DNA from: Octopus sinensis
Lineage: Eukaryota
NCBI RefSeq assembly: GCF_006345805.1
Contig: NC_043010.1
Location: 42,904,001 to 42,968,000, forward strand
Direction of reading: 5' to 3'
Length of the DNA: 64,000 bases
Made by a program: the position numbers and the translations under genes. This document shows, piece after piece, positions 1,952 to 60,221 of the stretch. How positions within the stretch are numbered: the stretch's first letter is position 1; every line of letters starts with the position of its first letter. The notes beneath the pieces were generated by a model that saw nothing but the letters and a program-made list of their open reading frames with translations, made no database searches and was not told the DNA's origin.

Positions 1952-3430
1952 ATGAATCATATGATACCATCAAATATTCCTAACTTTGACTTGGTTGATT
2001 CTATTCATGGTGTAGAACGGTCACATAGTTGTGAAATTTGTGGAAAAGGTTTCACTTGTTACGACAACCTTGAGCAACATAAAGGGACACACCAAATGGA
2101 TAAATCTTTTAACTGTGACACATGTGGTAAAGTTTTTAGTCAAGAGTATCATCTAAAACAACATCAAATGGTACACACGAGAGAAAAGCCTTTGAAATGT
2201 AATGTTTGTGGGAGTATCTTTTCTCGTAATGGAGACTTGACACGTCACATGCGAACTCACAGAGTTCCAATAACCACCACTTTCAGCAGTAGTAGTGTTT
2301 CTTGTAACCATCAACATACTGACAAATCTTTTAAATGTCATATATGTGGCTGTATATTTTCTCGAAATGGAAATCTTACACGCCACATGCGAACACATGT
2401 TAACACCACAACTCACTCTCGTATGAGCAATACTACTGTTTACCAACATCATCTCGCTGAGAAGAATTTTAAATGCAGTATCTGTGGCTGTGCTTTTTCT
2501 CGTAAAGGAGATCTAACAAGGCATTTTAGAAGTCATGATGCTGTCATTATTCCAAGAAGTAATGCACCTACAAATGTAAGCAGTATGCAAAAATATCAAA
2601 GTCCTAAAAACCCATTCAATTGTAAGGCTTGCTGGAAGGCTTTCACAGAGCACTCTGATGGTGAAGTACATGAACGTATACATGCGGCACTACTGCCATT
2701 CAAATGTGGAATTTGTGGTAAAGCCTTCCATGATAATAGCACACTTGAACGGCACAGAAGAACACATACAAATGAAAAAATGTTCAGCTGTGATATTTGT
2801 CTGAAGTCTTTTACTCAGAAGTCATCACTAAAGTTGCACAAACGTACTCATACTGGGGAGCGCCCCTTTAAATGCAACATATGTGGTTTTGCATTTTCTC
2901 GAAAAGATCATCTTGAGAGGCATCAGAAAACTAATAATGGTGACAGAAAACTGAGCTGTGTTCCTCAACACCTGCAGCGATCACCACGACAACAACAACA
3001 ACAGGCAATTCAATCACCCCAGAATCAACAATTCATTTCCATTGATATTCATCAGTCTCAGCTGAATGTATCCCAGTCACAAACTTCACAGCAACAATCA
3101 CAAACTCCACAACTCACAAATATATCACCTCAGCAGCAAGATCTACAAAAAAACACACAACATACAAATATGTCATCCCATCAAAACTCACAACACACAG
3201 ATATGCCACAACAATCCATATCACAACCATCTGATATGCCACAAGCTCCACAACATGCAGACCTTCCTCAGTCACAACAAGGTTCACAACATACAGACCT
3301 ACCACCACCTCAAGGTTCACAAGACTCAGATCTGACTCCATCACAACAGCCAAATTCACAAGTTCCAGACATGCCAACACCACAACCAGATTCACAACAC
3401 ACTGATGTACCACATTATATGAACATATGA
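1952..3430 (+). CDS. C2H2 zinc-finger protein ZNF-A (492 aa; 9 fingers, last one lacking the final His; Q-rich C-terminus)
   Basis: Intact ORF with C-x2-C...H-x3-H motifs and TGERP/TNEKM-type linkers; TTCACCATG start context; AG acceptor-like site at 1940-1941; AATAAA at 3837-3842. Confidence 0.95.
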   Translation: MNHMIPSNIPNFDLVDSIHGVERSHSCEICGKGFTCYDNLEQHKGTHQMDKSFNCDTCGKVFSQEYHLKQHQMVHTREKPLKCNVCGSIFSRNGDLTRHMRTHRVPITTTFSSSSVSCNHQHTDKSFKCHICGCIFSRNGNLTRHMRTHVNTTTHSRMSNTTVYQHHLAEKNFKCSICGCAFSRKGDLTRHFRSHDAVIIPRSNAPTNVSSMQKYQSPKNPFNCKACWKAFTEHSDGEVHERIHAALLPFKCGICGKAFHDNSTLERHRRTHTNEKMFSCDICLKSFTQKSSLKLHKRTHTGERPFKCNICGFAFSRKDHLERHQKTNNGDRKLSCVPQHLQRSPRQQQQQAIQSPQNQQFISIDIHQSQLNVSQSQTSQQQSQTPQLTNISPQQQDLQKNTQHTNMSSHQNSQHTDMPQQSISQPSDMPQAPQHADLPQSQQGSQHTDLPPPQGSQDSDLTPSQQPNSQVPDMPTPQPDSQHTDVPHYMNI

Positions 3431-4388
3431 AAATAGTTTAGTTGTTAATTTGAATTATCAGGAATTGTATTTGTCTATCATTTTAAAGATTCTCACCAGT
3501 TCCTTTTGCATGCATGACATGACATTAAACTGATATAGTTCATTGAATTTGGGGTATGTTGGAACATTATGGCACTTGTTTTTAACTACATTATATAGAA
3601 GACATTTATTGCAAAGTGTGATAAAAATTTCTTGAGTTATGAAGACATTTGAGATGCTTTGCTTGAGGTGCTAAGTTATTCTAAATAAGACAGAATTAAG
3701 CAAAAAATGTCACAAACATGTGAAGAGTAAATGTCATTAAAATTTACATATCATTTCTTGCCATTGGAAGATGGTAATTATGAAATAAATTGTTGGGAAA
3801 AGTTGAATATGATGAAACTTTGGTAAGATCTGTTGTAATAAACGTTAAATTTCATCACAACTATTGTTCATATTGCACCTGTTAAATTTCTGTTGTATTC
3901 ACATTTTCTCTACAGTTTTTAAATGCTTTTTACTGTGGAATAATGGAACTTGTCATCATATAGAAAATCATTGTTAAGTTTTGTTCAGCATATATTTTCT
4001 CTGTTACAAATTAGACATGATTAAGATAACATAATTTTCTATAATTCCAACCCCATATAAATTGCATGTGTGTGTATATCAGTATGTATGTATTACATAA
4101 ATGTTTTGTATTACATATATATAAATTTAAGTCACAGTATATAGATTCAAGTAATCTGGTTGCACTCATAAAAAAAGCTCCTTAATGTATCATTCTACAA
4201 AACATATAGAATATATAGTACAATACAAGGGAAAACCACAAGGAGTGTATAAAGTCATAAATGACAGAGAAATAGTTTGATGAAATTTTCATCATCATCA
4301 TCGTTTAACATCTGTTGCAGGGCAGCAATGCAATTGAATAATGGGTATGAGTGGGGGTAAAGCAGAAATTTACTTGTAATTAATAAGG

Positions 4389-4651
4389 CAAATAAGAAAA
4401 TGGAGAAGACAATGAATTGACAAACATCAGCCTGTTTCATTTGGATCTGTTTATTAATTAATTACAATCATATGTATAAGTAATCAAAATAAATAAACAA
4501 GTAAATAAATAAATTTATTTATTTACTTGTTTATTTGTTTATTTATTTTGATTAGTTATACATAGGATTGTAATTAATTTATAAATAGATCCAAATGAAT
4601 GTTTACAGGCTGATGTTTGTCAGTTGATTGTCCTCTCCATTTTCTTATTTG
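4389..4651. repeat. 263-bp zero-spacer inverted repeat (fold-back palindrome)
   Basis: Arms 4389-4513 and 4514-4651 are reverse complements, with a few substitutions and two indels (8 and ~5 nt). Confidence 0.95.
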
Positions 4652-4689
4652 TGTTATATATATATATATTATTTATATATATGTGTGTG

Positions 4690-4845
4690 TGTTTATATGT
4701 TTGTGTGTCTGTGTTTACATCCCTATAACTTAGCAGTTTAGCAAAAGAAACTGATAGAGTAAGTCCTGGGGTTGATTTGCTTGCCTAAAGGGTGGTGCTC
4801 CTGCATGGCAACAGCCAAATGAAATGAGTGAAACAAGTAAAAGAA
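4690..4845 (+). mobile_element. SINE 3' portion (...AAGTCCTGGGGTTGATT...GAAACAAGTAAAAGA family)
   Basis: Same family as 24150-24355, 24960-25115 and 60470-60670. Confidence 0.75.
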
Positions 4846-4868
4846 TATATATATATATATATATAATA

Positions 4869-5377
4869 TACGAGATAGTATCAAAAAGCTCCTGGGACTA
4901 GTTATGTTTAATAGAAAATAAGTTATTTACTTAAGAAATAGTCATCACCTTGCACAGCTATACACTGGTCCCAGTGTTCCTGCCACTTTTGGAATCCGAC
5001 TTTGATGTTGTTTTCCATAGGTCAGTCAAGGACCTTCTACGATTTGCTCTGGATTTTGACAACGGTGTTAAAACAATGACCTTTGAGCTGCCTTTTCATC
5101 TTGGGGAAGAGATGGAAGTCTGCAGGTGCTAAACCTGGCAAACAGGGCAGGCGTGGAAGTATTATCATGTTGATTTTGGTGAGAAACTCACGAGTGAGGA
5201 GAGCTCAGTGACAGGGTGCATTGTTGTGAAGAAACCAATTCTTTGCGCTCAACAGATCCAGTCAGTTTCGCTGAATGTCTTCGTGAAACTCTTCAAAACA
5301 TCACAGTAGAACTCTTGATTGATGGTCTGGCCTGGGGGATAAATTTTTGATGCACAATACCATGGATGTCAAAAAAA
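4869..5377 (-). mobile_element. mariner transposase C-terminal relic with terminal inverted repeat
   Basis: Minus-strand translation FFDIHGIVHQKFIP.GQTINQEFY...APADFHLFPKMKRQLKG...FQKWQEHWDQCI with stops and frameshifts; TA-CGAGATAGTATCAAAAAGCTCC end resembles a mariner TIR. Confidence 0.88.
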
Positions 5378-7818
5378 CTGCTGCTACTACTACTACTACT
5401 ACTAGCTTAGTAGTAGCTTAAAGTTATGTGAGGCTGCTAGTTCATTTTTTTATATCTTGAAACTTTACTTTTTAAACTTGACCATAAACTTGGATACCCT
5501 CAAAATATATTTTTGATGTTTAATATGTAACTTTGATTGTCATACTGGAAGGACTACAAAAGCCTCGGGCACTGTCTTTCAAAATTGACAAGCTTCCAAA
5601 AAAACAAAAACTTTGCTGTTCTCTCTAACTCAAAATACTTCTTTGTCCATTATTGTATCCTACCTACTTGAACTTTGAAAATGACCATTCACTTGTGGAA
5701 TTTCTTGCCATAAGATCCAAGATAAGTAAGGTGATTTCTGTATTTGGAAAAGATTTCAAGCCATAGTTCATTATAAAGTTTCAAGACTGAAGTTTCAAAG
5801 AATCTTGATCTGTGCCAAGTTAAAGAATATGGAACTGGACTGGTTTTGCAAAAATTGCTGAATGTTAAAAACTCTTTCTTTCATGCTTGTAAGTTTTCAG
5901 GATATACAGCTACAGGATCAGAAGGCCTCTTTACATTTTATTTCGATGTAAGTTACTCTAGAAAATGAAGGATATCAAAATGTAATTTCGCAAATGTTTA
6001 TAAACTACCTGGTTGTTTAGCTTTATGCCCACCCTAATCAAAACAGACCTATGATCAAAGGCCCCTATTTTTTAGATCTATATTGTCCAAGGTATTTTTT
6101 TTTTTTACCAAAGAACTTTAAGATGTTATTTATGGCAAATTTGGCTACTCTTTTCAGCCGGTTAAGTAACTACATAGAAGCTCCCAAATTTTTAGAAGGA
6201 TTTGAGTTTCAGCAATAATGCCAGTGTCAGACAAATCAGCATACTCCCAAATTCAGGTTGTCTTCAAGATTTTGCTTGTGTCTATCACTGATAAGTTTTT
6301 ATACCCTCCAAAAGTGGTTCATATCATTTGCTTATACTCATGCAGTGATTAATTGGGTGTTCTGATTGTGATTAAATTCTGGTTTGCAAATTAGTGAAGG
6401 TGATAGTAAGACAACGTTTGTAGTGAATTTGAAGATTTTTAGCTGTGTGATGTTCATGAGTAACAAGATTAGTGATATAATAATGTCAACCAGACTACTG
6501 GATGTTGTTAGGCACCACTTGTTACAATGCAATTTGCATCATTCTAGCTTTTCAATGATGTCTTCTTCCTGGCTAGGCAGCCAGGCCAACATTCCCCTTG
6601 AACAGACCATCAGCCTGTCCCAGCATTACCCATTAACTGGAGTGACATGACATGAAGTGTTTTGCTCAAGAACGCAACATACAACTGGTCTAGGAATTGA
6701 AACTACAACCTTGCAATCATGAGTGCAATACTATAACCACTAGGCTATGCACTTTAACTTGTATCAATATAAAATCCTTAAATTTTGATATATTGTAAAA
6801 TTTCACTTAAAAAAAAGTAAGATAGAATAAAAATTCCAGTCTAGATGTTTTTAGCAGAAGAAACCTTTATTTTTGACCAATGTGTGATAGAAAATACCAA
6901 ATTTAACTAAGAAGTTCTTCAATTAAATGTAAAAGGGGATTCAGTTTATAGTTTGCTCTGAGTTATTAAGAAAGTTATTCCCCTGATATCGACACAAACA
7001 TTGTTCAAATGAATCTTTTGAATGTGTTCTATTAACACATTCATCAAATAATAATGTAACACGTGTTTAAAAGATATTTTATCCCCTTGTCATTTTGTAG
7101 AACAGATTTATCTTTCTTTTCTTTTTTTGTTTACATTTCAAGGTTTTTAAGTAGAATCTGAAAGACTGGGTCCCTTTTCCGCTTCACTATACTTAGAACT
7201 TAATATTTATTTAGTGCATTACATTACACTGAATTTTAAGTAATAAGATAAAATGTTTTCTAGCTGCTCATGCTAAAGCAAATTATTCATACCAGTGTTG
7301 CTGTGGCTGCTTCAGATAGACTTATTCTATTCCAAGGAGACACATCATTGCTTATTTCTGATGAAGTTAAGTTAAAAATGTGATCCAAAATAAAAGGATC
7401 AACAAATATTTACATTTTCATGGCTTATCTCCAATAATCTTGTTGAGTTAGTTCTAAAGTGAAGCTGTTGATTGTCTTTCTTATTTTGCACAAAATATTT
7501 TATAAAAGGAACATCATCTAAAATAAATACATAAATAAAAATTTTTAGACAGTTCTGGAATAAAATAATATTTTAGAGATTCCAAATGTTTATAATTAAG
7601 TGATCAGATAGGAGAAAGTTTGAATACAACCCATTATCTATTCAGAGAGTATTTCTTTTACTGAAGACATTATGATTACATGTACCTGAATCTTTCTTTT
7701 ATTTACTGCTTATTGTTCTAATTAATTTATTGCCAGAAACCTGCAAAAAGTTTGGTTATAGCTACCTATGTCATCTGACAGGAACAACCTACTGCTACCA
7801 ACTATTCACTCCCCTTCA

Positions 7819-19206: not shown

Positions 19207-21759
19207 TTACAAACACATATATTTACTGACAGGAGGATATTCGTCACTTGTGGATGCTGTTGCTGGAGCAATATTGCTTTTATTGTCTTGTGATCGATTA
19301 ACTAATGATCCTGTGTTTACTGCTTCTGTTGAAGTTTCATTACCTTTCTGCAATGTTTGAACATTACCACCACAGTTTTCATTACAGCTACTGCCGATGT
19401 TGTTGCTGTTGTTATTAGAATTATTATTGGAACAAATGTGAGAGGAAATATGTTCAGAATTAGAATGAATAATTTGGATAGGTTGTGATGGTAAAGATGG
19501 TACTTTTATATTATGAGTGCGTTTATGTCTTTGCAAAGCATCTCTACGGGAAAATTGCTTAGGGCAAATCTCGCAGTGATATGGTTTTTCACCAGTATGA
19601 ATTCTTGCATGAATACGCAAATAGTCTCTCTGGGAAAACTGTTTCAGACAAATCTCACAGTGGTAAGGTTTTTCTCCAGTATGTGACCTCCTGTGTACGG
19701 CTAGTGTATTTTTACGTGCAAATCTCTGCCCACAAAATTCACATTCAAATGGACGTTCACCTGTGTGAATACGCTGATGTACAACCAAATAGTCCTTTTG
19801 CACGAACTGCTTGAAGCAAATGTTACATTGATAAGGGCATATCAAAGGCTGATTCTGTTGAACTTGCAAAGTATTTTGTTGTGGGAAATGTTTTGGACTT
19901 TGGCTATGAGAGAAAGGCTTAAAACCAACGTGCGTTTGCCTATGTATCTGCATTGCAGCTTTCTGTGAAAATTGGGCAGAACAAATTTCACATTTGAATG
20001 GCTTATTTCCAGTGTGTGAACGTCTGTGTATTACTAAAGTGTCTTTCCGAGAAAACCGTTTTGGACAAAGATCACAGTGGAATGGTTTTTCCCCAGTGTG
20101 TATACGCTTATGTATGACTAGATAGTCCTTTTGTGCAAACTGCTTGAGACACACCTCACACTGGTATGGTTTCTCACCTGAATGACGTACTCTATGTATT
20201 TTGAGAGTATCTCGACGAGCAAAGCTTTTTGAACAGATGTCACAAACAAATCTCTTGATTTTTACTTTCGTCTGAGGATGATGAGACCTTTGATGAGAAA
20301 GAAGCTTATCTCGTTTTATGAAGTTCATCCCACAGAGAGAACAGCTATATGGCTTTTCAAAGGTGTGCTGAGTACGTCGGTGTATTTGAAGTGTCTCACG
20401 GCGAGAAAATTTCTGAATGCAGAAGTCACACTGAAAAGGTTTCTCACCTGTATGTGTTCTGTAGTGTATTTGAAGCTTATCCTTTTGAGAAAATTGCTGA
20501 AGACACACATCACACTGGAATTTTTTTTCCCCTGTATGTATCTTGCGGTGGATTTGTAACGTACTCTTTCTTGCAAATGATTTTGAACAAAACTCGCATA
20601 CAAATGGTCTCTCACCAGTATGGACACGTCTGTGTATCTGCAAATAGTCCCGTTGTGCAAATTTCTTCCAGCAAATATCACAGCTATGTCTCTGTTTTCT
20701 AGAACTGTGTGGATTATTGCTATGTGTTTGTTTATGACTTTCAAGTTTCTGCCGCTTAGCAAACTGCATCCCACACACATCGCATCTGAAAGAGGTTTCA
20801 CCAGTATGAGTCCTTCGATGAATCTGAAGTGTATCTCGCCGAGCAAATTTCTGAATACAAAAATCACACTGATAGGGCTTTTCCCCAGTATGACTGCGCC
20901 TGTGAATTTTCAGGTAATCTTTTTGAGCAAATGACTGAAGGCATATATCACATTGATATTTTGGTTTATGCTCTTGTGATGATTCCATTTGACAGTGTGA
21001 TTGATAGGGCACTTTGTTGTCCTGTTGTTGGTAGTATATTGTTTGTTGTTGTTGTTGAAATTTAGGCTTTTGTTGATCTTTAACACCGTCATGCTGTTTA
21101 AAATGAGTTTTCTGATGAATTTTCAATGTATCTTTTCTAGAGAACTGTTTTTGACATATTTCACAATGGTAGGGTCTTTCCCCAGTATGTAATCTTTTGT
21201 GTATCTGTAGATAGTCTTTCTGAGCAAATTTTTTTAAGCATATATCACAGTGAAATTGTTTCTCCCCAGTGTGAGTACGCTTGTGGATTCGCAAGGTATC
21301 CCTACGGCCAAAGCTTTTAGAACAAACATCACACTGAAATGGTTTCTCTCCAGTATGAATTCTTCGATGAATCTGCATTAAATATTCCTGAACAAACTCC
21401 TTTCCACAGTAACCACAGAATAGTTGCCTAGGTTTTGTAGTCATGTTAATTTTATTTGCTTCAAGTTGATGTTTCTGATCAACAGTGGCGTCCGAATAGA
21501 ATGACTTTGATGATGAAGACATTGCCAATGATAAGTTGGCTTCTGAAGTAGTCAGTTGAGGTTTTTGGTGACAGTGAGGGCTGGCTTGTTTTGCAGATGA
21601 ATTATTTGTCATAATATCTTCTGATATAGATGATGATTGTGTTGGTGGTTGTTGTGGGGATACATAACATGGTTGACTAGATGGACTGCCATACATATCA
21701 TTAAGTAAAACTGTTTCATTGACCGGAGTTAGTCGAGGTGTTTGAAGACCTGAATCCAA
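19207..21759 (-). CDS. C2H2 zinc-finger protein ZNF-B, 3' segment (20 fingers)
   Basis: 850-codon open frame with 20 C2H2 motifs and TGEKP linkers; begins at TTG rather than ATG, overlapping the end of the upstream ORF; AATAAA on the minus strand at 18919-18924. Confidence 0.95.
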   Translation of the reverse strand: MDSGLQTPRLTPVNETVLLNDMYGSPSSQPCYVSPQQPPTQSSSISEDIMTNNSSAKQASPHCHQKPQLTTSEANLSLAMSSSSKSFYSDATVDQKHQLEANKINMTTKPRQLFCGYCGKEFVQEYLMQIHRRIHTGEKPFQCDVCSKSFGRRDTLRIHKRTHTGEKQFHCDICLKKFAQKDYLQIHKRLHTGERPYHCEICQKQFSRKDTLKIHQKTHFKQHDGVKDQQKPKFQQQQQTIYYQQQDNKVPYQSHCQMESSQEHKPKYQCDICLQSFAQKDYLKIHRRSHTGEKPYQCDFCIQKFARRDTLQIHRRTHTGETSFRCDVCGMQFAKRQKLESHKQTHSNNPHSSRKQRHSCDICWKKFAQRDYLQIHRRVHTGERPFVCEFCSKSFARKSTLQIHRKIHTGEKKFQCDVCLQQFSQKDKLQIHYRTHTGEKPFQCDFCIQKFSRRETLQIHRRTQHTFEKPYSCSLCGMNFIKRDKLLSHQRSHHPQTKVKIKRFVCDICSKSFARRDTLKIHRVRHSGEKPYQCEVCLKQFAQKDYLVIHKRIHTGEKPFHCDLCPKRFSRKDTLVIHRRSHTGNKPFKCEICSAQFSQKAAMQIHRQTHVGFKPFSHSQSPKHFPQQNTLQVQQNQPLICPYQCNICFKQFVQKDYLVVHQRIHTGERPFECEFCGQRFARKNTLAVHRRSHTGEKPYHCEICLKQFSQRDYLRIHARIHTGEKPYHCEICPKQFSRRDALQRHKRTHNIKVPSLPSQPIQIIHSNSEHISSHICSNNNSNNNSNNIGSSCNENCGGNVQTLQKGNETSTEAVNTGSLVNRSQDNKSNIAPATASTSDEYPPVSKYMCL

Positions 21760-25971: not shown

Positions 25972-26214
25972 GAAAGATTATGAACAAAACTGCTTTTAGT
26001 CCTAGTCAAATCTTTCAGCTTAATGAAGTGATACTAAATAAAAAACTGAATGATTGTTACTATGTTTGTTAATTTTTAAACTTTCAGATTCTGATCATGG
26101 ATTGCATGAATTAAGCGCACATCACGTACGCATATCCACATTTAAGTTGTGTGTGAGTATGTGCATATATGTGCGCATGTGCATATGCATGTGTGTGCAC
26201 ATATATTTGAATGC

Positions 26215-26268
26215 ATGTATATATATATATATATATACACACACACATTTGTATACATACATATATAC

Positions 26269-26353
<85 letters not shown>

Positions 26354-26360
26354 ATATATA

Positions 26361-26405
<45 letters not shown>

Positions 26406-26414
26406 TATATATAC

Positions 26415-26445
<31 letters not shown>

Positions 26446-26454
26446 ATATATACA

Positions 26455-26499
<45 letters not shown>

Positions 26500-26560
26500 A
26501 CATATATATATATAAATATATGTATGTATGTATGTATATATACATATGTGTGGCAAACTA
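26215..26560. repeat. long compound (TA)n/(TACA)n microsatellite
   Basis: Directly visible; the YIYI ORFs here are artefacts. Confidence 0.97.
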
Positions 26561-26699
26561 ATACATCTGCTTGTTTCTACATTTATCTTCATCTTTTGTT
26601 TTTCTGTAAATTTGAACTATATATACATATATATGTATAAACACATACTTATAAATATATACACTTATATACATGTAGTGATCCCAACCTCTGTCACTA

Positions 26700-27240: not shown

Positions 27241-27779
27241 TCCACTGTAAAATATGTCACCTAGGCAACAGAAACCACACACACACACACACACATACAT
27301 ATTATATATATTATATACATATACACATACACACACATATATATTATTTTACAAATTCTAGAAAAATGTCAGTTATTGAAATATCCTAAAAACGATACAA
27401 TAAAATGGTAATCTTGTTGAATTCTTCAGGCATATCTAGTTCAACTACCCAGGTCATCTGAGTGGCTGGCAGTATAAATGGCATGCAGTAGACCTCATAT
27501 CCTGGAATCCCTGAGCCGTGGCAGTTGTAGGCTGCGGGTGAGGTGTGAGGGTGGGGGTCAAGAGAGGATGCATCAAGAAGGTCAATGGACATCGCTTAGT
27601 AGCCAGCCTATGTTAATGCCGAAGGAACTTTTGAACCACCTTGTGTGCATGTATGTACCTAATTGTATGTGTGTGTGTGTATATAGGAAGGAAGAGAAAG
27701 AATTAGATATACATATACATACTGTCATTTAGAAGTGTTGCGTTCAAAATGTCTAAATCCTGCTTATATACATATAGAT

Positions 27780-27925
<146 letters not shown>

Positions 27926-31324: not shown

Positions 31325-31381
<57 letters not shown>

Positions 31382-31444
31382 GTATGTGTATATATATATA
31401 TACGCATATATATGTATGTATATAGATCGGTAGCCACTACGCAC

Positions 31445-31602
31445 ATTTTTTTCTCGTTTCTTTCTGTGTTCCTTTCTGTGAAAGAGCATAGGCTCGAAAC
31501 GTAAAATACCTTTTCAATTCCTGAGCGTTATACTAATACATCTGTTTGTTTTCTACACCACCTGTCTTTGTCTTTTGCTTTTTTCGTGAATTCTCCACCC
31601 CC
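31445..31602 (+). mobile_element. ~160-bp TA-flanked repeat containing a minimal hammerhead-like fold (Penelope-associated type)
   Basis: Copies at 31445-31602, 33117-33274 and 35975-36123, with a related family at 34705-34875 (-). Confidence 0.65.
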
Positions 31603-31614
31603 TATATATATATA

Positions 31615-31655
<41 letters not shown>

Positions 31656-32022
31656 TGCGTGTGTGTGTGTGTGTGTGTTTGTGTGTGTGTTTGTGTGTGT
31701 AGATACACAGCCGACAGCTGATGAAGGGTCGTTCTTTGTGTTGCTAGTCCTGTTTTCCATTTGTTTATCTCGTTGTTTGCATATTAAACTCATTTGTTTT
31801 CGTATTTCATGTTGTTTACTGTTGGTGACATCCTTTACCCATATATGCATATGTATGTATGTGTATATATATATATATATGTATAATTTATATATATGTA
31901 TACGCACGCACACATATATGCATATACATACATATATGCACTTGTATGCACACGTACACTTTCAAGAAATAGAGTTCTAGGTAATAATATGTACATGTAA
32001 GTAACGATATATGCATATATGA

Positions 32023-32620
32023 AGGCGGCGAGCTGGCAGAATCGTTAGCACGCCGAGCGAAATGCTTAACAGTATTTCGTCTGCTGCTACATTCTGAGTT
32101 CAAATTCCGCCGATGTCGACTTTGCCTTTCATCCTTTCGGGGTCGATTAAATAAGTACCAGTTACACACTGGGGTCGATATAATCGACTTAATCCGTTTG
32201 TCTGTCCTTGTTTGTCCTCTCTGTGTTTAGCCCCTTGTGGGTAGTAAAGAAATAGGTATTTCGTCTGCCGCTACGTTCTGAGTTCAAATTCCGCCGAGGT
32301 CGACTTTGCCTTTCATCCTTTAGGGGGGCGATAAATTAAGTACCAGCTACGCACTGGGGTCGATATAATCGACTTAATCCGTTTGTCTGTCCTTGTTTGT
32401 CCTCTCTGTGTTTAGCCCCTTGTGGGCAGAAAAGAGATAAGTATTTCGTCTGCCGCTACGTTCTGAATACAAATTCCGCCGAAGTCGACTTTGCCTTTCA
32501 TCCTTTAGGGGGTCGATAAATTAAGTACCAGTTGCATACTGGAGTCGATCTTATCGACTGGCCCCCTCCCCCCAAACTTCGGGCCTTGTGCCTAGAGTAG
32601 AAAAGAATATATGCATATAT
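32023..32620 (+). mobile_element. SINE trimer (full copy plus two 5'-truncated units), duplicated at 33711-34300
   Basis: Units restart at GTATTTCGTCTG directly after the AAAGA(A/G)ATA(G/A) tail. Confidence 0.9.
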
Positions 32621-33271
32621 GTAAAAATACATACACATATACATGCATAAAATAATGTACTCAAACAGTGGGTAGAAATGATATAGAGTACGCTTGCATG
32701 AAAATGTTTTAATTTGGGCATAATATGCATATATATTCGCATACACACATACGCATTCATGTATCTACACATATAGTTAGGCATTAATACATAGCTAAAA
32801 AACCAAAAAGACGAATTATATGTAACACACACTTTTCTATATACTTATACACGTACATGCTACATGTACTTATACATATTCGTGTTTTAATTACCGGAAT
32901 TTAATTATTGGGCAAAATCGAGACAGCTGTTAGAGAATATGCTGAACTTTTGCAGTTAATAAATTATATTAATGCTACTTCTCCATTTTCTGAATTTTGA
33001 TATATATATATATATTATATAAAAGGGCTTAGTAAAATAATGTATGTATGTATGTATGTGTATATATATATATACGCATATATATGTATGTATATAGATC
33101 GGTAGCCACTACGCACATTTTTTTCTCGTTTCTTTCTGTGTTCCTTTCTGTGAAAGAGCATAGGCTCGAAACGTAAAATACCTTTTCAATTCCTGAGCGT
33201 TATACTAATACATCTGTTTGTTTTCTACACCACCTGTCTTTGTCTTTTGCTTTTTTCGTGAATTCTCCACC

Positions 33272-33327
<56 letters not shown>

Positions 33328-34892
33328 TATATATATATGTGCGTGCGTGTGTGTGTGTGTGTGTTTGTGTGTGTGTTTGTGTGTGTAGATACACAGCCGA
33401 CAGCTGATGAAGGGTCGTTCTTTGTGTTGCTAGTCCTGTTTTCCATTTGTTTATCTCGTTGTTTGCATATTAAACTCATTTGTTTTCGTATTTCATGTTG
33501 TTTACTGTTGGTGACATCCTTTACCCATATATGCATATGTATGTATGTGTGTATATATATATATATATGTATAATTTATATATATGTATACGCACGCACA
33601 CATATATGCATATACATACATATATGCACTTGTATGCACACGTACACTTTCAAGAAATAGAGTTCTAGGTAATAATATGTACATGTAAGTAACGATATAT
33701 GCATATATGAAGGCGGCGAGCTGGCAGAATCGTTAGCACGCCGAGCGAAATGCTTAACAGTATTTCGTCTGCTGCTACATTCTGAGTTCAAATTCCGCCG
33801 ATGTCGACTTTGCCTTTCATCCTTTCGGGGTCGATTAAATAAGTACCAGTTACACACTGGGGTCGATATAATCGACTAATCCGTTTGTCTGTCCTTGTTT
33901 GTCCTCTCTGTGTTTAGCCCCTTGTGGGTAGTAAAGAAATAGGTATTTCGTCTGCCGCTACGTTCTGAGTTCAAATTCCGCCGAGGTCGACTTTGCCTTT
34001 CATCCTTTAGGGGGGCGATAAATTAAGTACCAGCTACGCACTGGGGTCGATATAATCGACTTAATCCGTTTGTCTGTCCTTGTTTGTCCTCTCTGTGTTT
34101 AGCCCCTTGTGGGCAGAAAAGAGATAAGTATTTCGTCTGCCGCTACGTTCTGAATACAAATTCCGCCGAAGTCGACTTTGCCTTTCATCCTTTAGGGGGT
34201 CGATAAATTAAGTACCAGTTGCATACTGGAGTCGATCTTATCGACTGGCCCCCTCCCCCCAAACTTCGGGCCTTGTGCCTAGAGTAGAAAAGAATATATG
34301 CATATATGTAAAAATACATACACATATACATGCATAAAATAATGTACTCAAACAGTGGGTAGAAATGATATAGAGTACGCTTGCATGAAAATGTTTTAAT
34401 TTGGGCATAATATGCATATATATTCGCATACACACATACGCATTCATGTATCTACACATATAGTTAGGCATTAATACATAGCTAAAAAACCAAAAAGACG
34501 AATTATATGTAACACACACTTTTCTATATACTTATACACGTACATGCTACATGTACTTATACATATTCGTGTTTTAATTACCGGAATTTAATTATTTGGG
34601 CAAAATCGAGACAGCTGTTAGAGAATATGCTGAACTTTTGCAGTTAATAAATTATATTAATGCTACTTCTCCATTTTCTGAATTTTGATATATATATATA
34701 TGAATATGAACAAAGAGAAAACACAACAACGCGAAGACATGGAACAAGTATAGTGTTATTGGACGCTCAGGAAAGGAAAGAAAGAACGAGGATTTAACGT
34801 TTCGAGCGGAGCTCTTCGTCAAAAACATAGAAAAAGGAAAGGTCCAAGGAAGGGAAGACGGAGAAAGAAAATCGCCAACGATACACACGCGG

Positions 34893-50714: not shown

Positions 50715-53700
50715 TCATCTGTATCTACAGGGAATAATTATTCGTCGTCCACTTTTTGTGGTTTTATTATTTTGTAGTGTTGAATTCTGTAGTTGTGCTG
50801 TTTTTGTTTTTTCATGCGTGTTTGTTGATTTTGGAAATATATTTTCATAATCTAATTCTTCTGTTATGCGAACGTGTTCGTTTGTTTTAAGAATATGTTG
50901 TCTATTTCGTTTGACTGTATTCCCTTCCTCTGTTATTACTAAGTATGAACGAGGTTGCTCTAGTTTTTTAATTATTTTGCCCCTTCTAAACCAATTGTTG
51001 TTAAACTTAATTCTAACCGTGTCGTGTGGTTTTAACTCTGGGAATTCTGTTGTAATGTTTGATTTCTTCTTTTCGTGAGGCCTGATACCAATTTTGTCGT
51101 GTAGTATGTTTGGGAGATTTGTTCGCAATGTTCTATTCATTATTTGATTTGCAGGGGATGGTGCACCATTTTGTAATTTAGTCGTGCGTAATGCTAAGAG
51201 CGCTAACTGAGGTTCTTCGTCACTTTTGAATGCCTTTTTTAGCGTCTTTTTTATTGTCTGTATATTTCTCTCAACCATGCCATTCGCTTGATGATAATGC
51301 GGGCTTGTCTTCGTGTGATGAAAATGCCAATTTTTTGCATATTTTTATGAATTCAGCCGAATTGAATTCTGGACCGTTGTCACTTACAACTGTTTGCGGA
51401 ATTCCGAATTTAGCAAAAGTTTCTTTTAATTTTTTGATTACGGTTTTTGACTGGCAATCATTTATTTCGTGTAGATCAAAAAATCTTGTTGTATAATCAA
51501 TAATTGTGACATACGAATTTCCAGACAGGTGAAATACGTCTGTACCCACTTTGGTCCATGGTGTAGTAGGTATTTCATGATTTATTAGTGGTTCGGCTGC
51601 TTGTTGATTTTTGTAGTCAATGCAGTATGAGCATGTGTTAATCATGTCTTTGATTTGAGCGTTAATGCCGGGCCAGTATATACATTCCTTCGCTCTCTCT
51701 ATGCATTTTTCGATACCCATGTGTCCGGTATGTATTTCCTGTAGAGCTTCTCTACGTAATGACTTAGGTACAATTATTCTTGAACCTTTTAGAACAAGAC
51801 CATTGACGATTGATATTTCATCACGAACGGAGACGAATGGTTTGATGTTTATTGGTATTTTGTCTTTTGGGGGCCATTCTGTTCTTGTATATGTGACGAG
51901 TGTCTGTAGAGACGGGTCGTCTGCAGTGGCTTCTTTATACTCTTTTAATTTAGTGTCGGTTATGGGGTAATTTTTTATTACTGCATGAATGTGCGATTTC
52001 ATATCTTCGTCTGATACTTCTGAGTATTTTGCTCAAGGTATGCACGTGATAGGGTATCTGCAACAATTGATTCTTTACCAGGTATGTGGTTGGTCAAAAT
52101 CATATCTTTGTAATGTTATTAGAAATCTTTGGATTCTGGGGGGGCATTTAGTGATCGATATTTTGAATATTTGCTTCAACGGTTTATGGTCATTTTCGAT
52201 TCTGAAATGAGTTCCGTATATAAACTGATGAAATTTCTTGCATGCGAAAACTATACTGAGAGCTTCGCTCTCTATCGGACAGTAGTTTTGTTCCGCTTGA
52301 GTTGTTGCACGAGATGCAAACGAAACAGGTAGCCATCTTTCGTTGTGTTTCTGCTCAAGTATCGCTCCGAGCCCATGCTTACTAGCATCTGTAGTTATTT
52401 TTATTGGTAGATCTGGATCATAAAATTGTAGCACTGGTTTTCTAGTAATCATTTCTTTTAGCTTTTTTTTGCTTCGATTTGTGGTTTGTCGAATGACCAT
52501 AACGTGTCACTCTGTAGAAGCTGGCGCAATGGTGCTGTGACTTCGGAGTAATTAGATAAAAATTTACATAGGTAATTTGTCATACCTAGGAATCTTTGTA
52601 ATTCTTTTTTACTTGTTGGCAGTGGCATGTGAATGATTGCTTGTACCTTGGTTGGATCTTGTTTTATCCTTCGCTGGTTAATATATGCCCAAGGTACTTG
52701 ATTTGGATTCATAGAAGATACACTTTGATTTATTTAACTTTAATCCGTGCTTTCGGATTCGATCGAAAACTTGTTGTAGTCTATTTGTGTGTTCTTCTAA
52801 AGTGTTGGAACAGATTATGATGTCATCCTGTGAATTTCTTGCTCCTTCTATGCCCTCTATTATTTTTGAAATTTCTTTTTGGAAAACTTCACTGGCGCTG
52901 TGAATTCCAAAGGGTAGTCGTGTGAAGCGATACCTTCCAAAGGTGTGTTGAACGTTAAAAGATGGGAGCTTTCTTCGTCAACTGGAATTTGCCAGTATCC
53001 ATTAGATGCATCGAGTTTTGAAAAATATTTAGGGTTATGCATTTGTGCAAAAATGTCCTCCGCTGTAGGGAGTTTGAAATGTTGCCTTTTTATGGCTTTG
53101 TTTGGATTCTTGGGGTCTAAACAGAGTCGGAGTTTTCCGTTGGCTTTTTCAACGATGACTAGGGAATTTACCCAGTCTGTAGGTTCACTAACAGGTTTTA
53201 TGATATCTAATTCTGTCATTCTTTTTAATTCTTTGTTGAGTTTTTCTTTTATAGAAAAAGGAACCGATCTTGGTGGATGAATTACAGGAGTTATTTGTGG
53301 ATCCACTGTGATATGATGTGTTATTGACAAAGTGCCGATTTCTCCGAAACAGTCTTCATATTTTTCTAATATGTCGTTTGTGTTCGACGAATTTATTTTT
53401 GAAATTCTCTGAATCAGGTTCAGATCTTTAGCTGTCTTTGCATCTATAACTGCGTGCGAGTTTGTTTTTGCAACAATGAATTTTATTTGCTTTGATAATT
53501 CTTTGTATTTAATGACTGCTGTGCATTTTCCTAGCACTTTTATAGCTGTGTTATTATAAGCTGATAATCGAGTTGAAGTTTTTTGCAGTTGTGGTTTTGG
53601 AATTATATTTCTATATTCTCTGAATGGCAGTACGGTTACGTCTGCTCCTGTATCTATTTTGAATGTTACATTCGAGTTGTTCACTTTTAGTTCGACCGTC

Positions 53701-54653
53701 CAAATGTCTTTTGGAGTCTTGAACTTTTCGATTTTGTGCACGCGGGAATTATTTGCAGTGATCATTTCGAGTGCATGTGTATCGTCATCTGATTCATCGT
53801 CGGTATGTATCTCTACTTTATGTACAAATTTTCTTGATTTGCACATTTTTGCATAGTGTCCTTTTTTCTTGCATTTTTCACATGTCTTGTGAAATGCTGG
53901 GCATTTATTTCTTTTGTGATTATAACCACAATAGTGACAGTTAGTGACGTAGTGTTGATTTGGCGCTTGAAACTTCGCGGGCTTTCTGTCACTTCCGCCT
54001 TGTTCGTTTTGATGTCTGGATTGCATATGGCGGGTTATTTGAGTTTTGGCGCCTTTTCTGTCGTGTTGACTATATACCCTCGAGATTTCGTTATCTCGTG
54101 TTTCGGATGTGGCATTTAGCATCCTTGATTGGAGTCGTGTTTGCTCTGCACTCTGACCTGCTTGAATTGTTTTTTGTAGGTCTAAATTTGGTTCTCTCAA
54201 TAATCTTTCTCTTAATCTCATGTCTCTGATTCCACATATCAGAATATCTTTGGTGAGACTGTCTGTGAGGTTGCCGAATTCGCACTGTTGTGCCTTTTGG
54301 CGCAACTCTACTACGTACTCATCGAATTTTTGATGTTCCGCTTGTCCACATGTGAAGAATTTGTGTCTTAGGAAAGTTATGTTTTTCCTGGGTTCACAAT
54401 ATGCATCGAATTTTTCGATTACTGTCTGAAGGTTCATTTCTTCGTCGGGTGAATCGAAATCCAGTGTGGAATGGATATCTCGGCCTTTAGAACCGATGCA
54501 AGTTAAAAACCTTGACGTTTTTACTTTGTCTGGCTTCATGTCACTTTCTGTTGCTATCAAAAAGAGATTGAATTCTTTTTTCCACTTTTTCCATGCTGCG
54601 GCTAGATTTTCCTGATTAAAGTCTAGGTCTTTTGGATGCGGTAAATTTTCCAT
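50715..54653 (-). CDS. Gag-Pol polyprotein (~1314 aa after correcting 7 small indels)
   Basis: Zn knuckle CEKCKKKGHYAKMC, protease FKIDTGAD, RT SQDD, RNase H TDAS..DHKPL, integrase H-H-C-C and D-D(35)E. Confidence 0.9.
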
Positions 54654-54720
54654 TTCGTCTTTGAAGTATGATTTCAACTTCTTTTTTCCTTTGGTTTCTG
54701 TATTTTGGGTTCTTTTAGTA

Positions 54721-57598: not shown

Positions 57599-58237
57599 TT
57601 TAAATGGTTACAGAATTAACACAGGTTATATATAGGAACATAAACCTTCTTCCACGAAAAGATAGCTTAAACTGTGCTCTAAATGGAGGTGTAGTCAAAT
57701 CCTATTTTATGGACTCAACCATGTTCTAAAATAAGTGGAAAGGTAAGCTACTATAAATCGGCATGAACTTTCCGGACAACCCAGTAACTTCTGGAACCAT
57801 ACGAAATGCGTATGAACAACTCAGTAAGCATTTAGGAATTCAGTGCAGTGCTAGTGACGGTTGGTTGTGGAGTTTCGGTAACAAGCATGGACTGCGTGAT
57901 ACACAGGTGAGGGGTGAGACTGGTAGGGTAGATGCGGCAAGTGCTGAGGTTTGTCGAGTTAAGCTTAATGAGCTGATTAAGAAAGAAGGTCTTCTTATGT
58001 CCCAGGTGTACAACACCGATGAAACTGGCTTATTCTGGCGCTCTCAGCCTAATAATACTCAGGCACGTAAGGATGAAGAAGTAATAAGAGGAAAGAAAAC
58101 ATCAAAGGAAAGGATTTCGGCACTTTGTTGTGCTAACACTGACGGTATGCACCAATATAAGTTGTTGGTTGTTGGTAAATCATCTCGGCCCCGTGCATTG
58201 AAAGATCACATGCACACCTTGCCAGTTCTTTATTACC

Positions 58238-58674
58238 TATTTCTTTACTACCCACAGGGGGCTAAACATAGAGGGGACAAACAAGGACAGACAAACAGAT
58301 TAAGTCGATTACATCGACCCCAGTGCGGAACTGGTACTTAATTTATCGACCCCGAAAGGATGAAAGGCAAAGTCGACCTCGGCGGAATTTGATCTCAGAA
58401 CGTTGCGACAGACGAAATAGCTATTTCTTTATTACCCACAAGGGGCTAAACACAGAGGGGACAAACAAGGACAGACATAGGTATTAAGTCGATTACATCG
58501 ACCCCAGTGCGGAACTGGTACTTAATTTATCGACCCCGAAAGGATGAAAGGCAAAGTCAACCTCGGCGGAATTTGAACTCAGAACGTAACGACAGACGAA
58601 ATACCGCTAAGCATTTCATCCGGCGTGCTAACGTAACTGCCAGCTCGCCGCCTCCTTTATTACCACTCCAGCTC
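58238..58674 (-). mobile_element. SINE dimer with 17-bp TSD
   Basis: TSD GCCAGTTCTTTATTACC at 58221-58237 and 58675-58691. Confidence 0.92.
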
Positions 58675-58989
58675 GCCAGTTCTTTATTACCACACCAAGA
58701 AAGCTTGGTTTAATGCTTCCATTTTCTCTGACTGGTTATATAAGCATTTTGTACCAGAAGTGCGAAGGTACCAGGAGGACGTGTTGAAGTTTCGCCCTGA
58801 TGATGTAAAAACTCTTGGCTTTTAGATAATGTGCCTGCCCACCCCACTGCTGTCAAGCTTGTAAGCGCTAACAACAGAATTCATGTTATGTGTTTGCCTG
58901 CAAACACCGCATCACACATTCAGTCAATGGACCAAGGTGTCATCAGTGCCTGTAAAAGAAGATACCAACGACGCTATTTAAATGAGGTT

Positions 58990-59223
58990 TAAGGTGGCGA
59001 GCTGGCAGAAACGTTAGCGCGCCATGCGAAATGCTTAGCGGTATTTCGTCTGTCGCAACGTTCTGAGATCAAATTCCGCCGAGGTCGACTTTGCCTTTCA
59101 TCCTTTCGGGGTCGATAAATTATGTACCAGTTACCCACTGGGGTCGATGTAATCGACTTAATACCTATGTCTGTCCTTGTTTGTTCCCTCTATGTTTAAC
59201 CTCTTGTGGGTAATAAAGAAATA
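58990..59223 (+). mobile_element. young SINE with 17-bp TSD
   Basis: TSD GCTATTTAAATGAGGTT at 58973-58989 and 59224-59240. Confidence 0.94.
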
Positions 59224-60221
59224 GCTATTTAAATGAGGTTATGGTGGTTCTCGAGAATGGGCAGGATATAGAAAACGACACCAGAGGACTACATACACTT
59301 CAAAACATACGGAATTACACTATTAAATCTGCCATATTTAACTTTTCTAATTTGTGGAAAGATCTGAAAATATCTACCTTAGCAAATAGCTGGAAGAAAC
59401 GCCTAATTGATGCAGAACCTGATTACGACTTCGTGTGCTGCAGCGTGCAGGTGAGAAAGATATAGCCTTGGGGGATGTTCAAGATTGGCTGGATGAAAAT
59501 GAGAGTGATCTGGGATACCAGATACTTTCAGATGAAGAGATTGTTGCAGAGATGGTCGGCACCCAGGAGAGTATCAGCAGTGACGTGGAAGACGAGGTGC
59601 CGGTAACATTGCCAAAACTGTCGGAGGTGAGTAGCTGTATGGACACCGTGCTACAGTTTGTGGAACACATCAAGAATAGAGATATCAATGTTCATTATGG
59701 AAATTTCTGAATTCTTCGAGAAGCCATAATTAAAGAATCATTTCAAAGCGGCAAGTAGTTAAAATTAGACAGCTTTTTCAAACCAGTAAAGGCTCCGCGA
59801 TCACCTGATGCACCAGGGTTACCAGCCTGTCCGCCCTCACTCTCACCTAATGAACCACCGGCCTCTACCTCACATTGTTCAAGTACTACTGATACATCTG
59901 TACCACCAGTACAGCTTACAACCAGCGGTACATCATTGGAGCTGCAAAGCTCCAGTGATTCAGAATAAATTTCTAAGGCCCCACTATACGATCACGGCAT
60001 ATCAACAGCACCTCTTCATCATCCATGGTAAGTCTGATTTTAAAATTAAAATGTTGAATTTACTGTATTATAGTGTATATTTAAAGTGTACAGGTATTTT
60101 ACACTGTCAGATTGGACAGAGCGCTTGATTAAAAATACAGTACTGTATTTATTCCTCTGTCTTTCGTAATGTAATTGTTGATATTGGCCACTCCTAACGT
60201 AACCTAACCTTAGTGTTGGTA

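What the first reader, a model, noticed from the sequence alone, without database searches (positions are those of the whole stretch)
4389..4651. 263-bp zero-spacer palindrome ~1 kb downstream of the ZNF-A stop codon
Seen: the centre GTAAATAAATAAA|TTTATTTATTTAC has no loop. The arms pair over ~125 bp with scattered mismatches and two indels, so the structure is old but retained. The left arm holds several AATAAA hexamers that the right arm would sequester. No TSD or MITE terminus was recognised. Known: long spacerless palindromes are unstable, and coleoid cephalopods have extensive ADAR A-to-I editing of dsRNA. Inference: if inside an extended 3' UTR, this is an editing or Dicer substrate, or a structural switch for poly(A) site choice (a proximal AATAAA lies at 3837).
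Basis: partly seen in the sequence, partly recalled or inferred. Interest (0 to 1): 0.7.

Follow-up and report, generated by a model that had tools for sequence, protein, structure and literature searches.

The report
Solitary AT-rich quasi-palindrome near octopus ZNF gene
A real 275-bp hairpin-forming palindrome lies about 950 bp past a zinc-finger gene in the Octopus sinensis genome, but it looks like an ordinary decaying foldback repeat or local inverted duplication, of a kind known to be abundant in octopus DNA, and nothing shows that it regulates anything.

Summary
Window 4383-4657 (CM016872.1:42,908,383-42,908,657, Octopus sinensis) is a spacerless quasi-palindrome. Its arms are 131 and 144 nt and 92% identical, with 10 substitutions and two indels. 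It has a perfect 46-bp AT-rich core (4491-4536) inside an (AAAT)n/(ATTT)n tract. The predicted RNA hairpin is -160 kcal/mol (z = -24).

It starts 953 nt after the ZNF-A stop. It sits where unique sequence meets a block of microsatellites, a SINE-like fragment and a dead mariner.

I found no second copy in about 95 kb of octopus DNA, no Rfam match, and no comparable hairpin downstream of two other ZNF genes. Half of the arm differences are transversions that break pairing.

Copy number, orthologous loci and transcription could not be tested, because no cephalopod genome or RNA-seq is reachable with these tools.

My best reading is a neutral, roughly 10-My-old palindromic non-autonomous transposon copy (MITE-like). 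The close rival is a local fold-back inverted duplication at the AAAT tract. If it is transcribed it would be a passive ADAR target. That is unremarkable, because long dsRNA-forming loci are reported as exceptionally common in octopus and palindromic repeats are known hyper-editing substrates. There is no support for a Dicer or poly(A)-switch role. Interest is low.

The parts
4383..4513 (.). Left arm of the quasi-palindrome (131 nt)
   Evidence: It pairs with 4514-4657 at 92.4% identity. It is continuous with about 950 bp of unique sequence to its left.
4514..4657 (.). Right arm (144 nt). It carries a 5-nt insertion at 4600-4604 and about 8 extra nt of GTTT/ATTT repeat just outside the core.
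4491..4536 (.). Perfectly symmetric 46-bp AT-rich core, axis at 4513|4514
   Evidence: Direct extension from the axis.
4487..4548 (.). (AAAT)7 followed by (ATTT)9, a microsatellite that spans the axis. It is the source of the four AATAAA hexamers in the left arm.
   Evidence: TRF; hexamer positions.
4655..4714 (.). (TA)n then (TG)n microsatellite, directly abutting the right arm
   Evidence: TRF.
4715..4845 (.). Fragment of a high-copy SINE-like repeat
   Evidence: It has 4 diverged copies elsewhere in the window and 8 more in L024 and L001.
4925..5380 (-). Decayed mariner-type transposase C-terminus with stops and frameshifts
   Evidence: The minus-strand translations show mariner-like C-terminal motifs, for example ...FLHNNAPCH*...LPCLPGLAPADFHLFPKMK.... 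It has no similarity to the palindrome arms.
1952..3430 (+). ZNF-A: an intact 492-aa C2H2 zinc-finger ORF with a Q/S/P-rich tail. Its stop is 953 nt upstream of the palindrome.
   Evidence: ORF list; Pfam zf-C2H2 at 1e-44.
3524..3842 (+). Cluster of four canonical poly(A) hexamers: ATTAAA at 3524 and 3736, AATAAA at 3784 and 3837. These are the likely normal 3' end region of ZNF-A.
   Evidence: Regex scan. The window-wide AATAAA density is 0.92 per kb, so this is suggestive only.

Best explanation
The feature is a solitary, decaying, AT-rich quasi-palindrome in transposon-rich intergenic DNA. It is not a dedicated regulatory device.

Its most likely origin is one copy of a palindromic non-autonomous DNA transposon: a MITE whose two terminal inverted repeats meet in the middle, like the 80-bp human Made1 or the ~200-bp palindromic Harbinger repeat of Xenopus. 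It would have inserted at the AT-rich edge of a (TA)n tract roughly 10 My ago. Since then the arms have drifted apart by 10 substitutions and two indels.

The 8-nt asymmetry next to the 46-bp core, together with the mismatches, should suppress cruciform extrusion. That would explain why the palindrome persists without any need for selection.

If polymerase reads through from ZNF-A, or from any neighbouring promoter on either strand, the RNA folds on itself into a duplex of about 125 bp. ADAR would then hyper-edit it passively, as happens to such repeats generally.

Shown here: the structure, its uniqueness in the sample, its context and the mutational pattern. Inferred: the transposon origin, the age, and any editing.
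For: Structure and size:
- 275 bp, non-coding, the whole length is an inverted repeat with no spacer. This is MITE-like architecture.

Flanks and neighbourhood:
- The ends are flanked by TA (or TAA/TTA). The joined flanks would read ...AATTAATA|TATATATA..., a natural target for a TA-specific (Tc1/mariner-type) or TWA-specific (PIF/Harbinger-type) insertion at the edge of a (TA)n tract.
- The neighbourhood holds a dead mariner 270 bp away, SINE fragments and microsatellites.

Age:
- Arm divergence is JC 0.080. With the octopus calibration JC 0.09 = 25 My (PMC13282606), that gives about 11 My when split between the two arms.
- This is of the same order as the TIR-transposon burst reported at JC 0.09. 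Tc1-mariner is the most numerous recently active TIR group in O. vulgaris.

No signature of selection on pairing:
- There are 5 transversions against 5 transitions, plus 2 indels.
- 4 of the 5 transitions give G-U on the + strand. This is not significant.

Literature:
- Octopus has an exceptionally high fraction of loci (4.4e-3) that form long near-perfect dsRNA with nearby sequence. A palindromic Harbinger repeat is the most edited repeat in Xenopus (PMC5625713).
- Central asymmetry abolishes cruciform extrusion and instability in PATRR constructs (PMC1851657).
Against: - No second copy of the arm was found in about 95 kb of octopus DNA (window, L001, L024, L025). The adjacent SINE-like family has 12 other copies in the same sample. 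This only excludes a very high-copy family, roughly above 1e5 copies.
- No diagnostic TIR motif or unambiguous TSD is present. TA is self-complementary and lies within the palindrome.
- The arms have no similarity to the neighbouring mariner remnant.
- The left arm runs on from unique sequence and the axis lies in a microsatellite. Both fit the rival origin, a local inverted duplication, equally well.
Confidence: 0.45

Rival explanations
1. A local inverted duplication. A break or stalled fork in the (AAAT)n tract let the 3' end snap back on the self-complementary AAATTT and copy about 130 nt of the adjacent unique sequence in reverse. Synthesis then rejoined in the neighbouring (TA)n tract. 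This is a fold-back or template-switch event. The result is a single-copy palindrome that has been decaying neutrally ever since.
For: - The axis lies exactly in an (AAAT)7/(ATTT)9 microsatellite with a self-complementary AAATTT centre.
- The left arm is continuous with 950 bp of unique sequence, whereas the right arm abuts microsatellite and transposon debris.
- There is no other copy in about 95 kb, and no peptide relative of the flank-plus-arm reading frame among 1.84 billion representatives.
- There is no TIR or TSD signature.
- Fold-back priming from ssDNA hairpins is an established route to inverted duplications in yeast and human (abstracts of PMC7467729, PMC10622511 and PMC3907307, listed).
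Against: - The documented fold-back events are mostly large and terminal. A neat 131-nt interstitial event needs a second switch back to the original template.
- The size and architecture are just as typical of MITEs.
- The sampling depth is far too small to show that the sequence is single-copy.
Confidence: 0.35
2. A functional RNA hairpin in an extended ZNF-A 3' UTR. It would act as a selected ADAR or Dicer substrate, or as a switch that hides distal AATAAA signals.
For: - A very stable duplex of about 125 bp forms on the + strand: -160.4 kcal/mol against -141.9 on the - strand, because 4 of the 5 transitions give G-U on the + strand.
- The palindrome is 953 nt from the stop of an intact ZNF ORF.
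- Cephalopod ADAR activity is high and acts mostly on non-coding dsRNA (PMC5625713).
Against: - Four poly(A) hexamers lie within 410 nt of the stop.
- There is no evidence that ZNF-A is annotated or expressed.
- 5 of the 10 substitutions and both indels break pairing.
- The AATAAA hexamers are microsatellite by-products.
- No similar hairpin lies downstream of two other ZNF genes, and there is no Rfam match.
- Dicer processing of long dsRNA was reported as elusive in molluscs (PMC12479628).
- The 4:1 strand bias of G-U changes is not significant (one-sided binomial p of about 0.19).
Confidence: 0.07
3. A long-read assembly artefact: a palindromic chimaeric read from a missed hairpin adapter, or a fold-back chimaera from amplification.
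For: The window comes from a long-read-era chromosome assembly, GCA_006345805.1. Spacerless palindromes are a known artefact type (my own knowledge).
Against: - Artefactual palindromes have near-identical, usually kilobase-long arms.
- Here the arms are only 131 and 144 nt and differ by 10 substitutions, half of them transversions, and two indels.
- The structure is internal to a 68-Mb scaffold, with normal sequence on both sides.
Confidence: 0.03

Closest known systems
Palindromic ~200-bp Harbinger MITE of Xenopus tropicalis, the most hyper-edited repeat of that genome (PMC5625713)
   Same: It is a non-coding element of about 200-280 bp that folds on itself into a tight hairpin with a very short loop. 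It needs no inverted partner nearby to form dsRNA, so it would be an ADAR target whenever it is transcribed.
   Different: The Xenopus element is a demonstrated multi-copy family with measured editing. Here copy number, family membership, transcription and editing are all untested. The TWA duplication expected of Harbinger is not a clean direct repeat here (TAA on the left, TTA on the right).
Human Made1 MITE (Hsmar1-derived) and the mir-548 family (PMC1784062)
   Same: It is a nearly perfect palindrome made of two terminal inverted repeats, associated with mariner activity and TA target sites. It forms a stable RNA hairpin from either strand.
   Different: Made1 is 80 bp (two 37-bp TIRs plus 6 bp), which is pre-miRNA sized. 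This element is 275 bp with no loop, which is far too long for Drosha or pre-miRNA processing. It has no similarity to the neighbouring mariner remnant and no Rfam miRNA match.
Human palindromic AT-rich repeats: PATRR17 ~190 bp, PATRR11 ~450 bp, PATRR22 ~600 bp (PMC1851657, PMC4940405)
   Same: It is a unique-sequence, spacerless, AT-rich palindrome a few hundred bp long, with its AT-richest part at the centre (88-92% AT here).
   Different: PATRR11 and PATRR22 are over 90% AT and nearly perfect. This one is 77% AT overall and 92% symmetric, with an 8-nt asymmetry next to the core. In PATRR constructs those features abolish cruciform extrusion and instability. No breakage data exist for this locus.
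Fold-back (hairpin-primed) inverted duplications in yeast and human (PMC7467729, PMC10622511, PMC3907307)
   Same: It is an inverted duplication whose axis lies at a short self-complementary sequence.
   Different: The known cases are mostly large, terminal and linked to gross rearrangements. This one is a 131-nt interstitial event, if that is its origin at all.

Membership tests
MITE (Tc1/mariner- or PIF/Harbinger-derived) | Short (under about 800 bp), non-coding | tested here: met
   275 bp. Only short chance ORFs are present.
MITE (Tc1/mariner- or PIF/Harbinger-derived) | Terminal inverted repeats | tested here: met
   The whole element is an inverted repeat, 92% identical.
MITE (Tc1/mariner- or PIF/Harbinger-derived) | Target-site duplication as a direct repeat (TA or TWA) | tested here: inconclusive
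   TA flanks 4386-4654, but TA is self-complementary and belongs to the palindrome. The TAA/TTA pair is a reverse complement, not a direct repeat.
MITE (Tc1/mariner- or PIF/Harbinger-derived) | Many dispersed copies in the genome | not testable with these tools
   There are 0 further copies in about 95 kb of octopus DNA. The metagenome 18-mer scan gave only chance hits. No cephalopod genome can be searched here.
MITE (Tc1/mariner- or PIF/Harbinger-derived) | TIR similarity to an autonomous element | tested here: not met
   No similarity to the mariner remnant at 4925-5380 or to anything else in the window. Only the elements present in the window could be compared.
Drosophila-type Foldback (FB) elements | Long inverted arms built of tandem sub-repeats | tested here: not met
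   TRF finds only the central AAAT/ATTT tract and no arm-wide sub-repeats.
PATRR (palindromic AT-rich repeat) | Several hundred bp, spacerless palindrome | tested here: met
   275 bp, with the axis at 4513|4514 and no spacer.
PATRR (palindromic AT-rich repeat) | Over 90% AT and nearly perfect symmetry (PMC4940405) | tested here: not met
   77% AT overall, reaching 88-92% only in the central ~100 bp. Arm identity is 92.4%, with an 8-nt and a 5-nt asymmetry.
PATRR (palindromic AT-rich repeat) | Breakage or translocation at the centre | not testable with these tools
   This needs population or germline data.
Animal miRNA precursor | Hairpin of about 60-90 nt with a terminal loop; match to a known family | tested here: not met
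   The hairpin is 275 nt with a loop of 0-6 nt. Rfam 15 gives no match except a chance SCARNA7 hit at E = 0.54.
hpRNA / endo-siRNA locus | Transcribed long hairpin that yields Dicer-sized small RNAs | not testable with these tools
   No small-RNA data are available here. The literature reports that such processing is elusive in molluscs (PMC12479628).
ADAR hyper-editing substrate | Long, nearly perfect intramolecular dsRNA | tested here: met
   125 base pairs at -160.4 kcal/mol on the + strand and -141.9 on the - strand.
ADAR hyper-editing substrate | Transcription and clustered A-to-G mismatches in reads | not testable with these tools
   No RNA-seq access.

The most novel reading that the evidence does not exclude
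The palindrome is single-copy, conserved among Octopus species, and included in a long 3' UTR isoform of a lineage-specific C2H2 zinc-finger gene. There its ~125-bp hairpin would act as a cis ADAR-recruiting or dsRNA-sensing element that tunes the gene's expression. It might also act as a PATRR-like fragile site that promotes rearrangement of the ZNF cluster.
Probability: 0.05. Interest if true: 0.55.

Novelty: new member of a known kind. Interest (0 to 1): 0.15.

Why it matters
As it stands, it matters little. It is one more self-folding repeat in a genome that is already reported to hold an exceptional density of dsRNA-forming loci.

It would matter only if genome-wide searches showed it to be single-copy and conserved, and RNA-seq showed it inside a ZNF 3' UTR. 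It would then be a tractable example of a structured ADAR-recruiting element attached to a member of the octopus-expanded C2H2 family. If instead it is a multi-copy palindromic MITE, its family could be a notable source of hyper-edited RNA in octopus, as Harbinger is in Xenopus.

Tried and rejected
1. Orthologous loci through the ZNF-A protein.
- The full-length search gave only paralogues of 44% identity or less.
- The non-finger C-terminal tail gave nothing.
- The exact sequence is not in the cluster collection.
- No O. vulgaris or O. bimaculoides locus could therefore be fetched.

2. Exact look-up of the 61-aa chance ORF across the left arm, as a handle on Logan or other contigs. It is not on record.

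3. Exhaustive HMMER search of the 68-aa open frame covering the left flank and arm, against 1.84 billion representatives. It gave 0 hits. I did not use the third word-indexed search, because the locus is evidently not represented in that collection.

4. Metagenome scan with an 18-mer shared by both arms. It gave 22 hits, all chance, extending only about 19-22 nt.

5. A 37-nt similarity between the right end and 32980-33016 / 34668-34701. It is a 12-nt match plus (TA)n, not homology.

6. Derivation from the neighbouring mariner. There is no similarity.

7. TSD inference. I abandoned it, because TA, TAA and TTA at the ends are part of the palindrome.

8. miRNA or other known RNA families. There is no Rfam match.

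9. A recurrent hairpin downstream of ZNF genes. None is present at ZNF-B or at the L024 ZNF.

10. Strand bias of G-U-compatible transitions (4 of 5 on the + strand). The sample is too small to mean anything.

11. Endogenous parvovirus-type terminal hairpin. I dismissed this because no viral-like ORF lies nearby. I did not pursue it further.

Full report
SOURCE AND COORDINATES

The ZNF-A product is encoded on CM016872.1 of GCA_006345805.1. A paralogue on the same 68.4-Mb record is named by NCBI as Octopus sinensis. Window position x corresponds to CM016872.1 position 42,904,000 + x. The palindrome is therefore at 42,908,383-42,908,657.

THE OBSERVATION

Reading the sequence, the repeat finder and a global alignment of the left arm with the reverse complement of the right arm all confirm a spacerless quasi-palindrome at 4383-4657 (275 bp).

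- The perfectly symmetric core is 46 bp, 4491-4536.
- The arms share 122 of 132 aligned positions (92.4%). There are 5 transitions and 5 transversions, giving JC distance 0.080.
- The right arm has a 5-nt insertion (4600-4604) and about 8 extra nt of GTTT/ATTT repeat just outside the core.
- A 34-mer from the left arm recurs only in the right arm, with none in 100 shuffles.
- Predicted folding energy is far beyond shuffled controls. RNA gives -161.4 against -47.7 +/- 4.7 kcal/mol, z = -24. DNA gives -105.8, z = -28.
- The + strand RNA (-160.4; 96 A-U, 24 G-C and 5 G-U pairs) is more stable than the - strand RNA (-141.9). This is because 4 of the 5 transitions are G-U compatible on the + strand. 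A 4:1 split is not significant.
- Overall AT content is 77%. It rises to 88-92% in the central ~100 bp and falls to 56-60% at 4408-4432 and 4608-4632.
- The centre is an (AAAT)7 tract followed by (ATTT)9. That tract is the sole source of the four AATAAA hexamers in the left arm.

CONTEXT

ZNF-A is an intact 492-aa C2H2 ORF at 1952-3430, with Pfam zf-C2H2 at 1e-44. The palindrome begins 953 nt after its stop.

Four canonical poly(A) hexamers lie at 3524, 3736, 3784 and 3837. There are none in the next 550 nt, until the palindrome's own. The background AATAAA density is 0.92 per kb, so this is only suggestive of a normal 3' end well upstream of the palindrome.

The 950 bp between the stop and the palindrome are essentially unique in the sample. 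Going rightwards from the palindrome:
- (TA)n then (TG)n at 4655-4714.
- A fragment of a high-copy SINE-like family at 4715-4845, with 12 other copies in about 95 kb.
- (TA)n at 4845-4870.
- A decayed mariner transposase C-terminus on the minus strand at about 4925-5380.
- What looks to me, by eye, like a tRNA-type SINE near 6560-6770.

The next gene is a convergent 850-aa ZNF at 19207-21759. The palindrome therefore sits at the junction between unique post-gene sequence and a transposon and microsatellite block in an intergenic region.

IS IT A REPEAT FAMILY?

BLASTN with word size 7 finds no other copy of the arm in the 64-kb window. Nor does it find one in the 8 kb upstream (L001), a second O. 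sinensis ZNF locus (L024, 21 kb) or a Logan contig (L025).

A 37-nt similarity near 32.98 and 34.67 kb is a 12-nt match plus (TA)n. It is not homology.

This sample is only about 3.5e-5 of a genome of roughly 2.7 Gb (genome size from my own knowledge). It excludes only an extremely abundant family.

None of the reachable collections holds cephalopod genomes:
- A metagenome scan with an 18-mer common to both arms returned 22 hits. That is about the number I would expect by chance for an 18-mer in a collection of this size (my estimate). None of them extends beyond about 19-22 nt.
- Routes through proteins failed. ZNF-A has no relative above 44% identity, its tail has none at all, and the exact sequence is absent from the cluster collection.
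- A 61-aa chance ORF across the arm is not on record.
- An exhaustive HMMER search with the 68-aa open frame over the flank and arm found nothing among 1.84 billion representatives.

Copy number, orthology and transcription therefore remain untested.

KNOWN RNA FAMILIES AND RECURRENCE

Rfam 15 gives no match other than a chance hit at E = 0.54.

No complex hairpin lies downstream of ZNF-B or of the L024 ZNF. In the whole window the only other short-spacer inverted repeats are (TA)n tracts. The longer inverted repeats are oppositely oriented SINE copies.

WHAT IT MOST LIKELY IS

The architecture is that of a palindromic MITE: short, non-coding, inverted over its entire length, AT-rich in the middle and flanked by TA. 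Two published examples are close.
- The 80-bp Made1 element, made of two 37-bp TIRs plus 6 bp (PMC1784062).
- The ~200-bp palindromic Harbinger repeat that is the most hyper-edited repeat of Xenopus (PMC5625713).

Removing 4386-4654 plus one TA would leave ...AATTAATA|TATATATA..., a natural TA-rich target.

On age, the published octopus calibration is JC 0.09 = 25 My. TIR transposons are reported to have expanded at that distance, and Tc1-mariner is the most numerous recently active TIR group in O. vulgaris (PMC13282606). An arm-to-arm JC of 0.080 then implies about 11 My since the arms were identical. This estimate is uncertain, because a founder element need not have had perfect arms, and gene conversion could have slowed the divergence.

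The main rival fits the local evidence about equally well. It is a fold-back or template-switch inverted duplication primed at the self-complementary AAATTT inside the microsatellite (mechanism literature listed). It is favoured by two things: the left arm is continuous with unique sequence, and there is no transposon terminus. I rate the MITE origin at 0.45 and the local duplication at 0.35.

Either way the mutational pattern looks like neutral decay. Half of the substitutions are transversions that break pairing, and there are two indels.

Only 46 bp remain perfectly symmetric, and an 8-nt asymmetry lies beside them. In PATRR constructs, a 9-nt central spacer plus four nearby mismatches abolished cruciform extrusion and instability (PMC1851657).

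Any transcript through the locus, from either strand, would form a duplex of about 125 bp and would be a plausible ADAR substrate. That is a generic property of such sequences, not a special one.
- Octopus has an exceptionally high fraction (4.4e-3) of loci that can form long near-perfect dsRNA with nearby sequence.

A Dicer role has no support. A mollusc small-RNA survey that included O. bimaculoides found evidence of long-dsRNA processing elusive (PMC12479628). A poly(A) switch has no support beyond hexamers that are microsatellite by-products.

An assembly artefact is unlikely. The arms are short and differ by substitutions, which is not what a fold-back chimaeric read would give.

VERDICT

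It is most likely an ordinary decaying palindromic repeat or a local inverted duplication. It is a new instance of a known kind, and its interest is low unless genome-wide and RNA data show that it is single-copy, conserved and part of the ZNF-A transcript.

Noticed in passing
window 1952-3430: ZNF-A is an intact 492-aa C2H2 ORF. Its last ~165 residues are a Q/S/P-rich tail with SQHTD(M/L)P-like repeats. It is absent from the 15-billion-protein collection, and its best relative there is only 44% identical. It may be an unannotated, lineage-specific or very young ZNF gene.
   Followed up: partly
window 31368-34700: Near-identical tandem duplication with a period of about 1.69 kb (copies 98-100% identical). 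Each copy holds an internal 185-bp tandem repeat, at 32005-32674 and 33877-34361.
   Followed up: partly
window 57763-59232: A pogo-like DDE_1 transposase ORF (57763-58341) is interrupted by three copies of what I recognise as an abundant octopus SINE. Two are in tandem (58229-58419, 58415-58653) and one is inverted (58992-59232). Together they give 239-nt inverted arms, 92% complementary and 338 nt apart. This is another potential dsRNA-forming locus.
   Followed up: partly
window 19207-21759 (-): An 850-aa C2H2 zinc-finger ORF (ZNF-B), with at least 15 zf-H2C2_2 matches. It is convergent with ZNF-A, and the two define the intergenic region that holds the palindrome.
   Followed up: partly
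window 50715-54677 (-): Pieces of an LTR-retrotransposon pol gene, split over several ORFs: aspartyl protease, RVT_1, Integrase_H2C2 and rve.
   Followed up: no
window 4925-5380 (-): Decayed mariner-type transposase C-terminus with stops and frameshifts. Upstream of it lies a (CTA)7 tract at 5384-5404.
   Followed up: partly
window 26200-26650 and 27765-27920: Long (TA)n tracts. They account for most of the other 'palindromes' in the window-wide inverted-repeat list.
   Followed up: no
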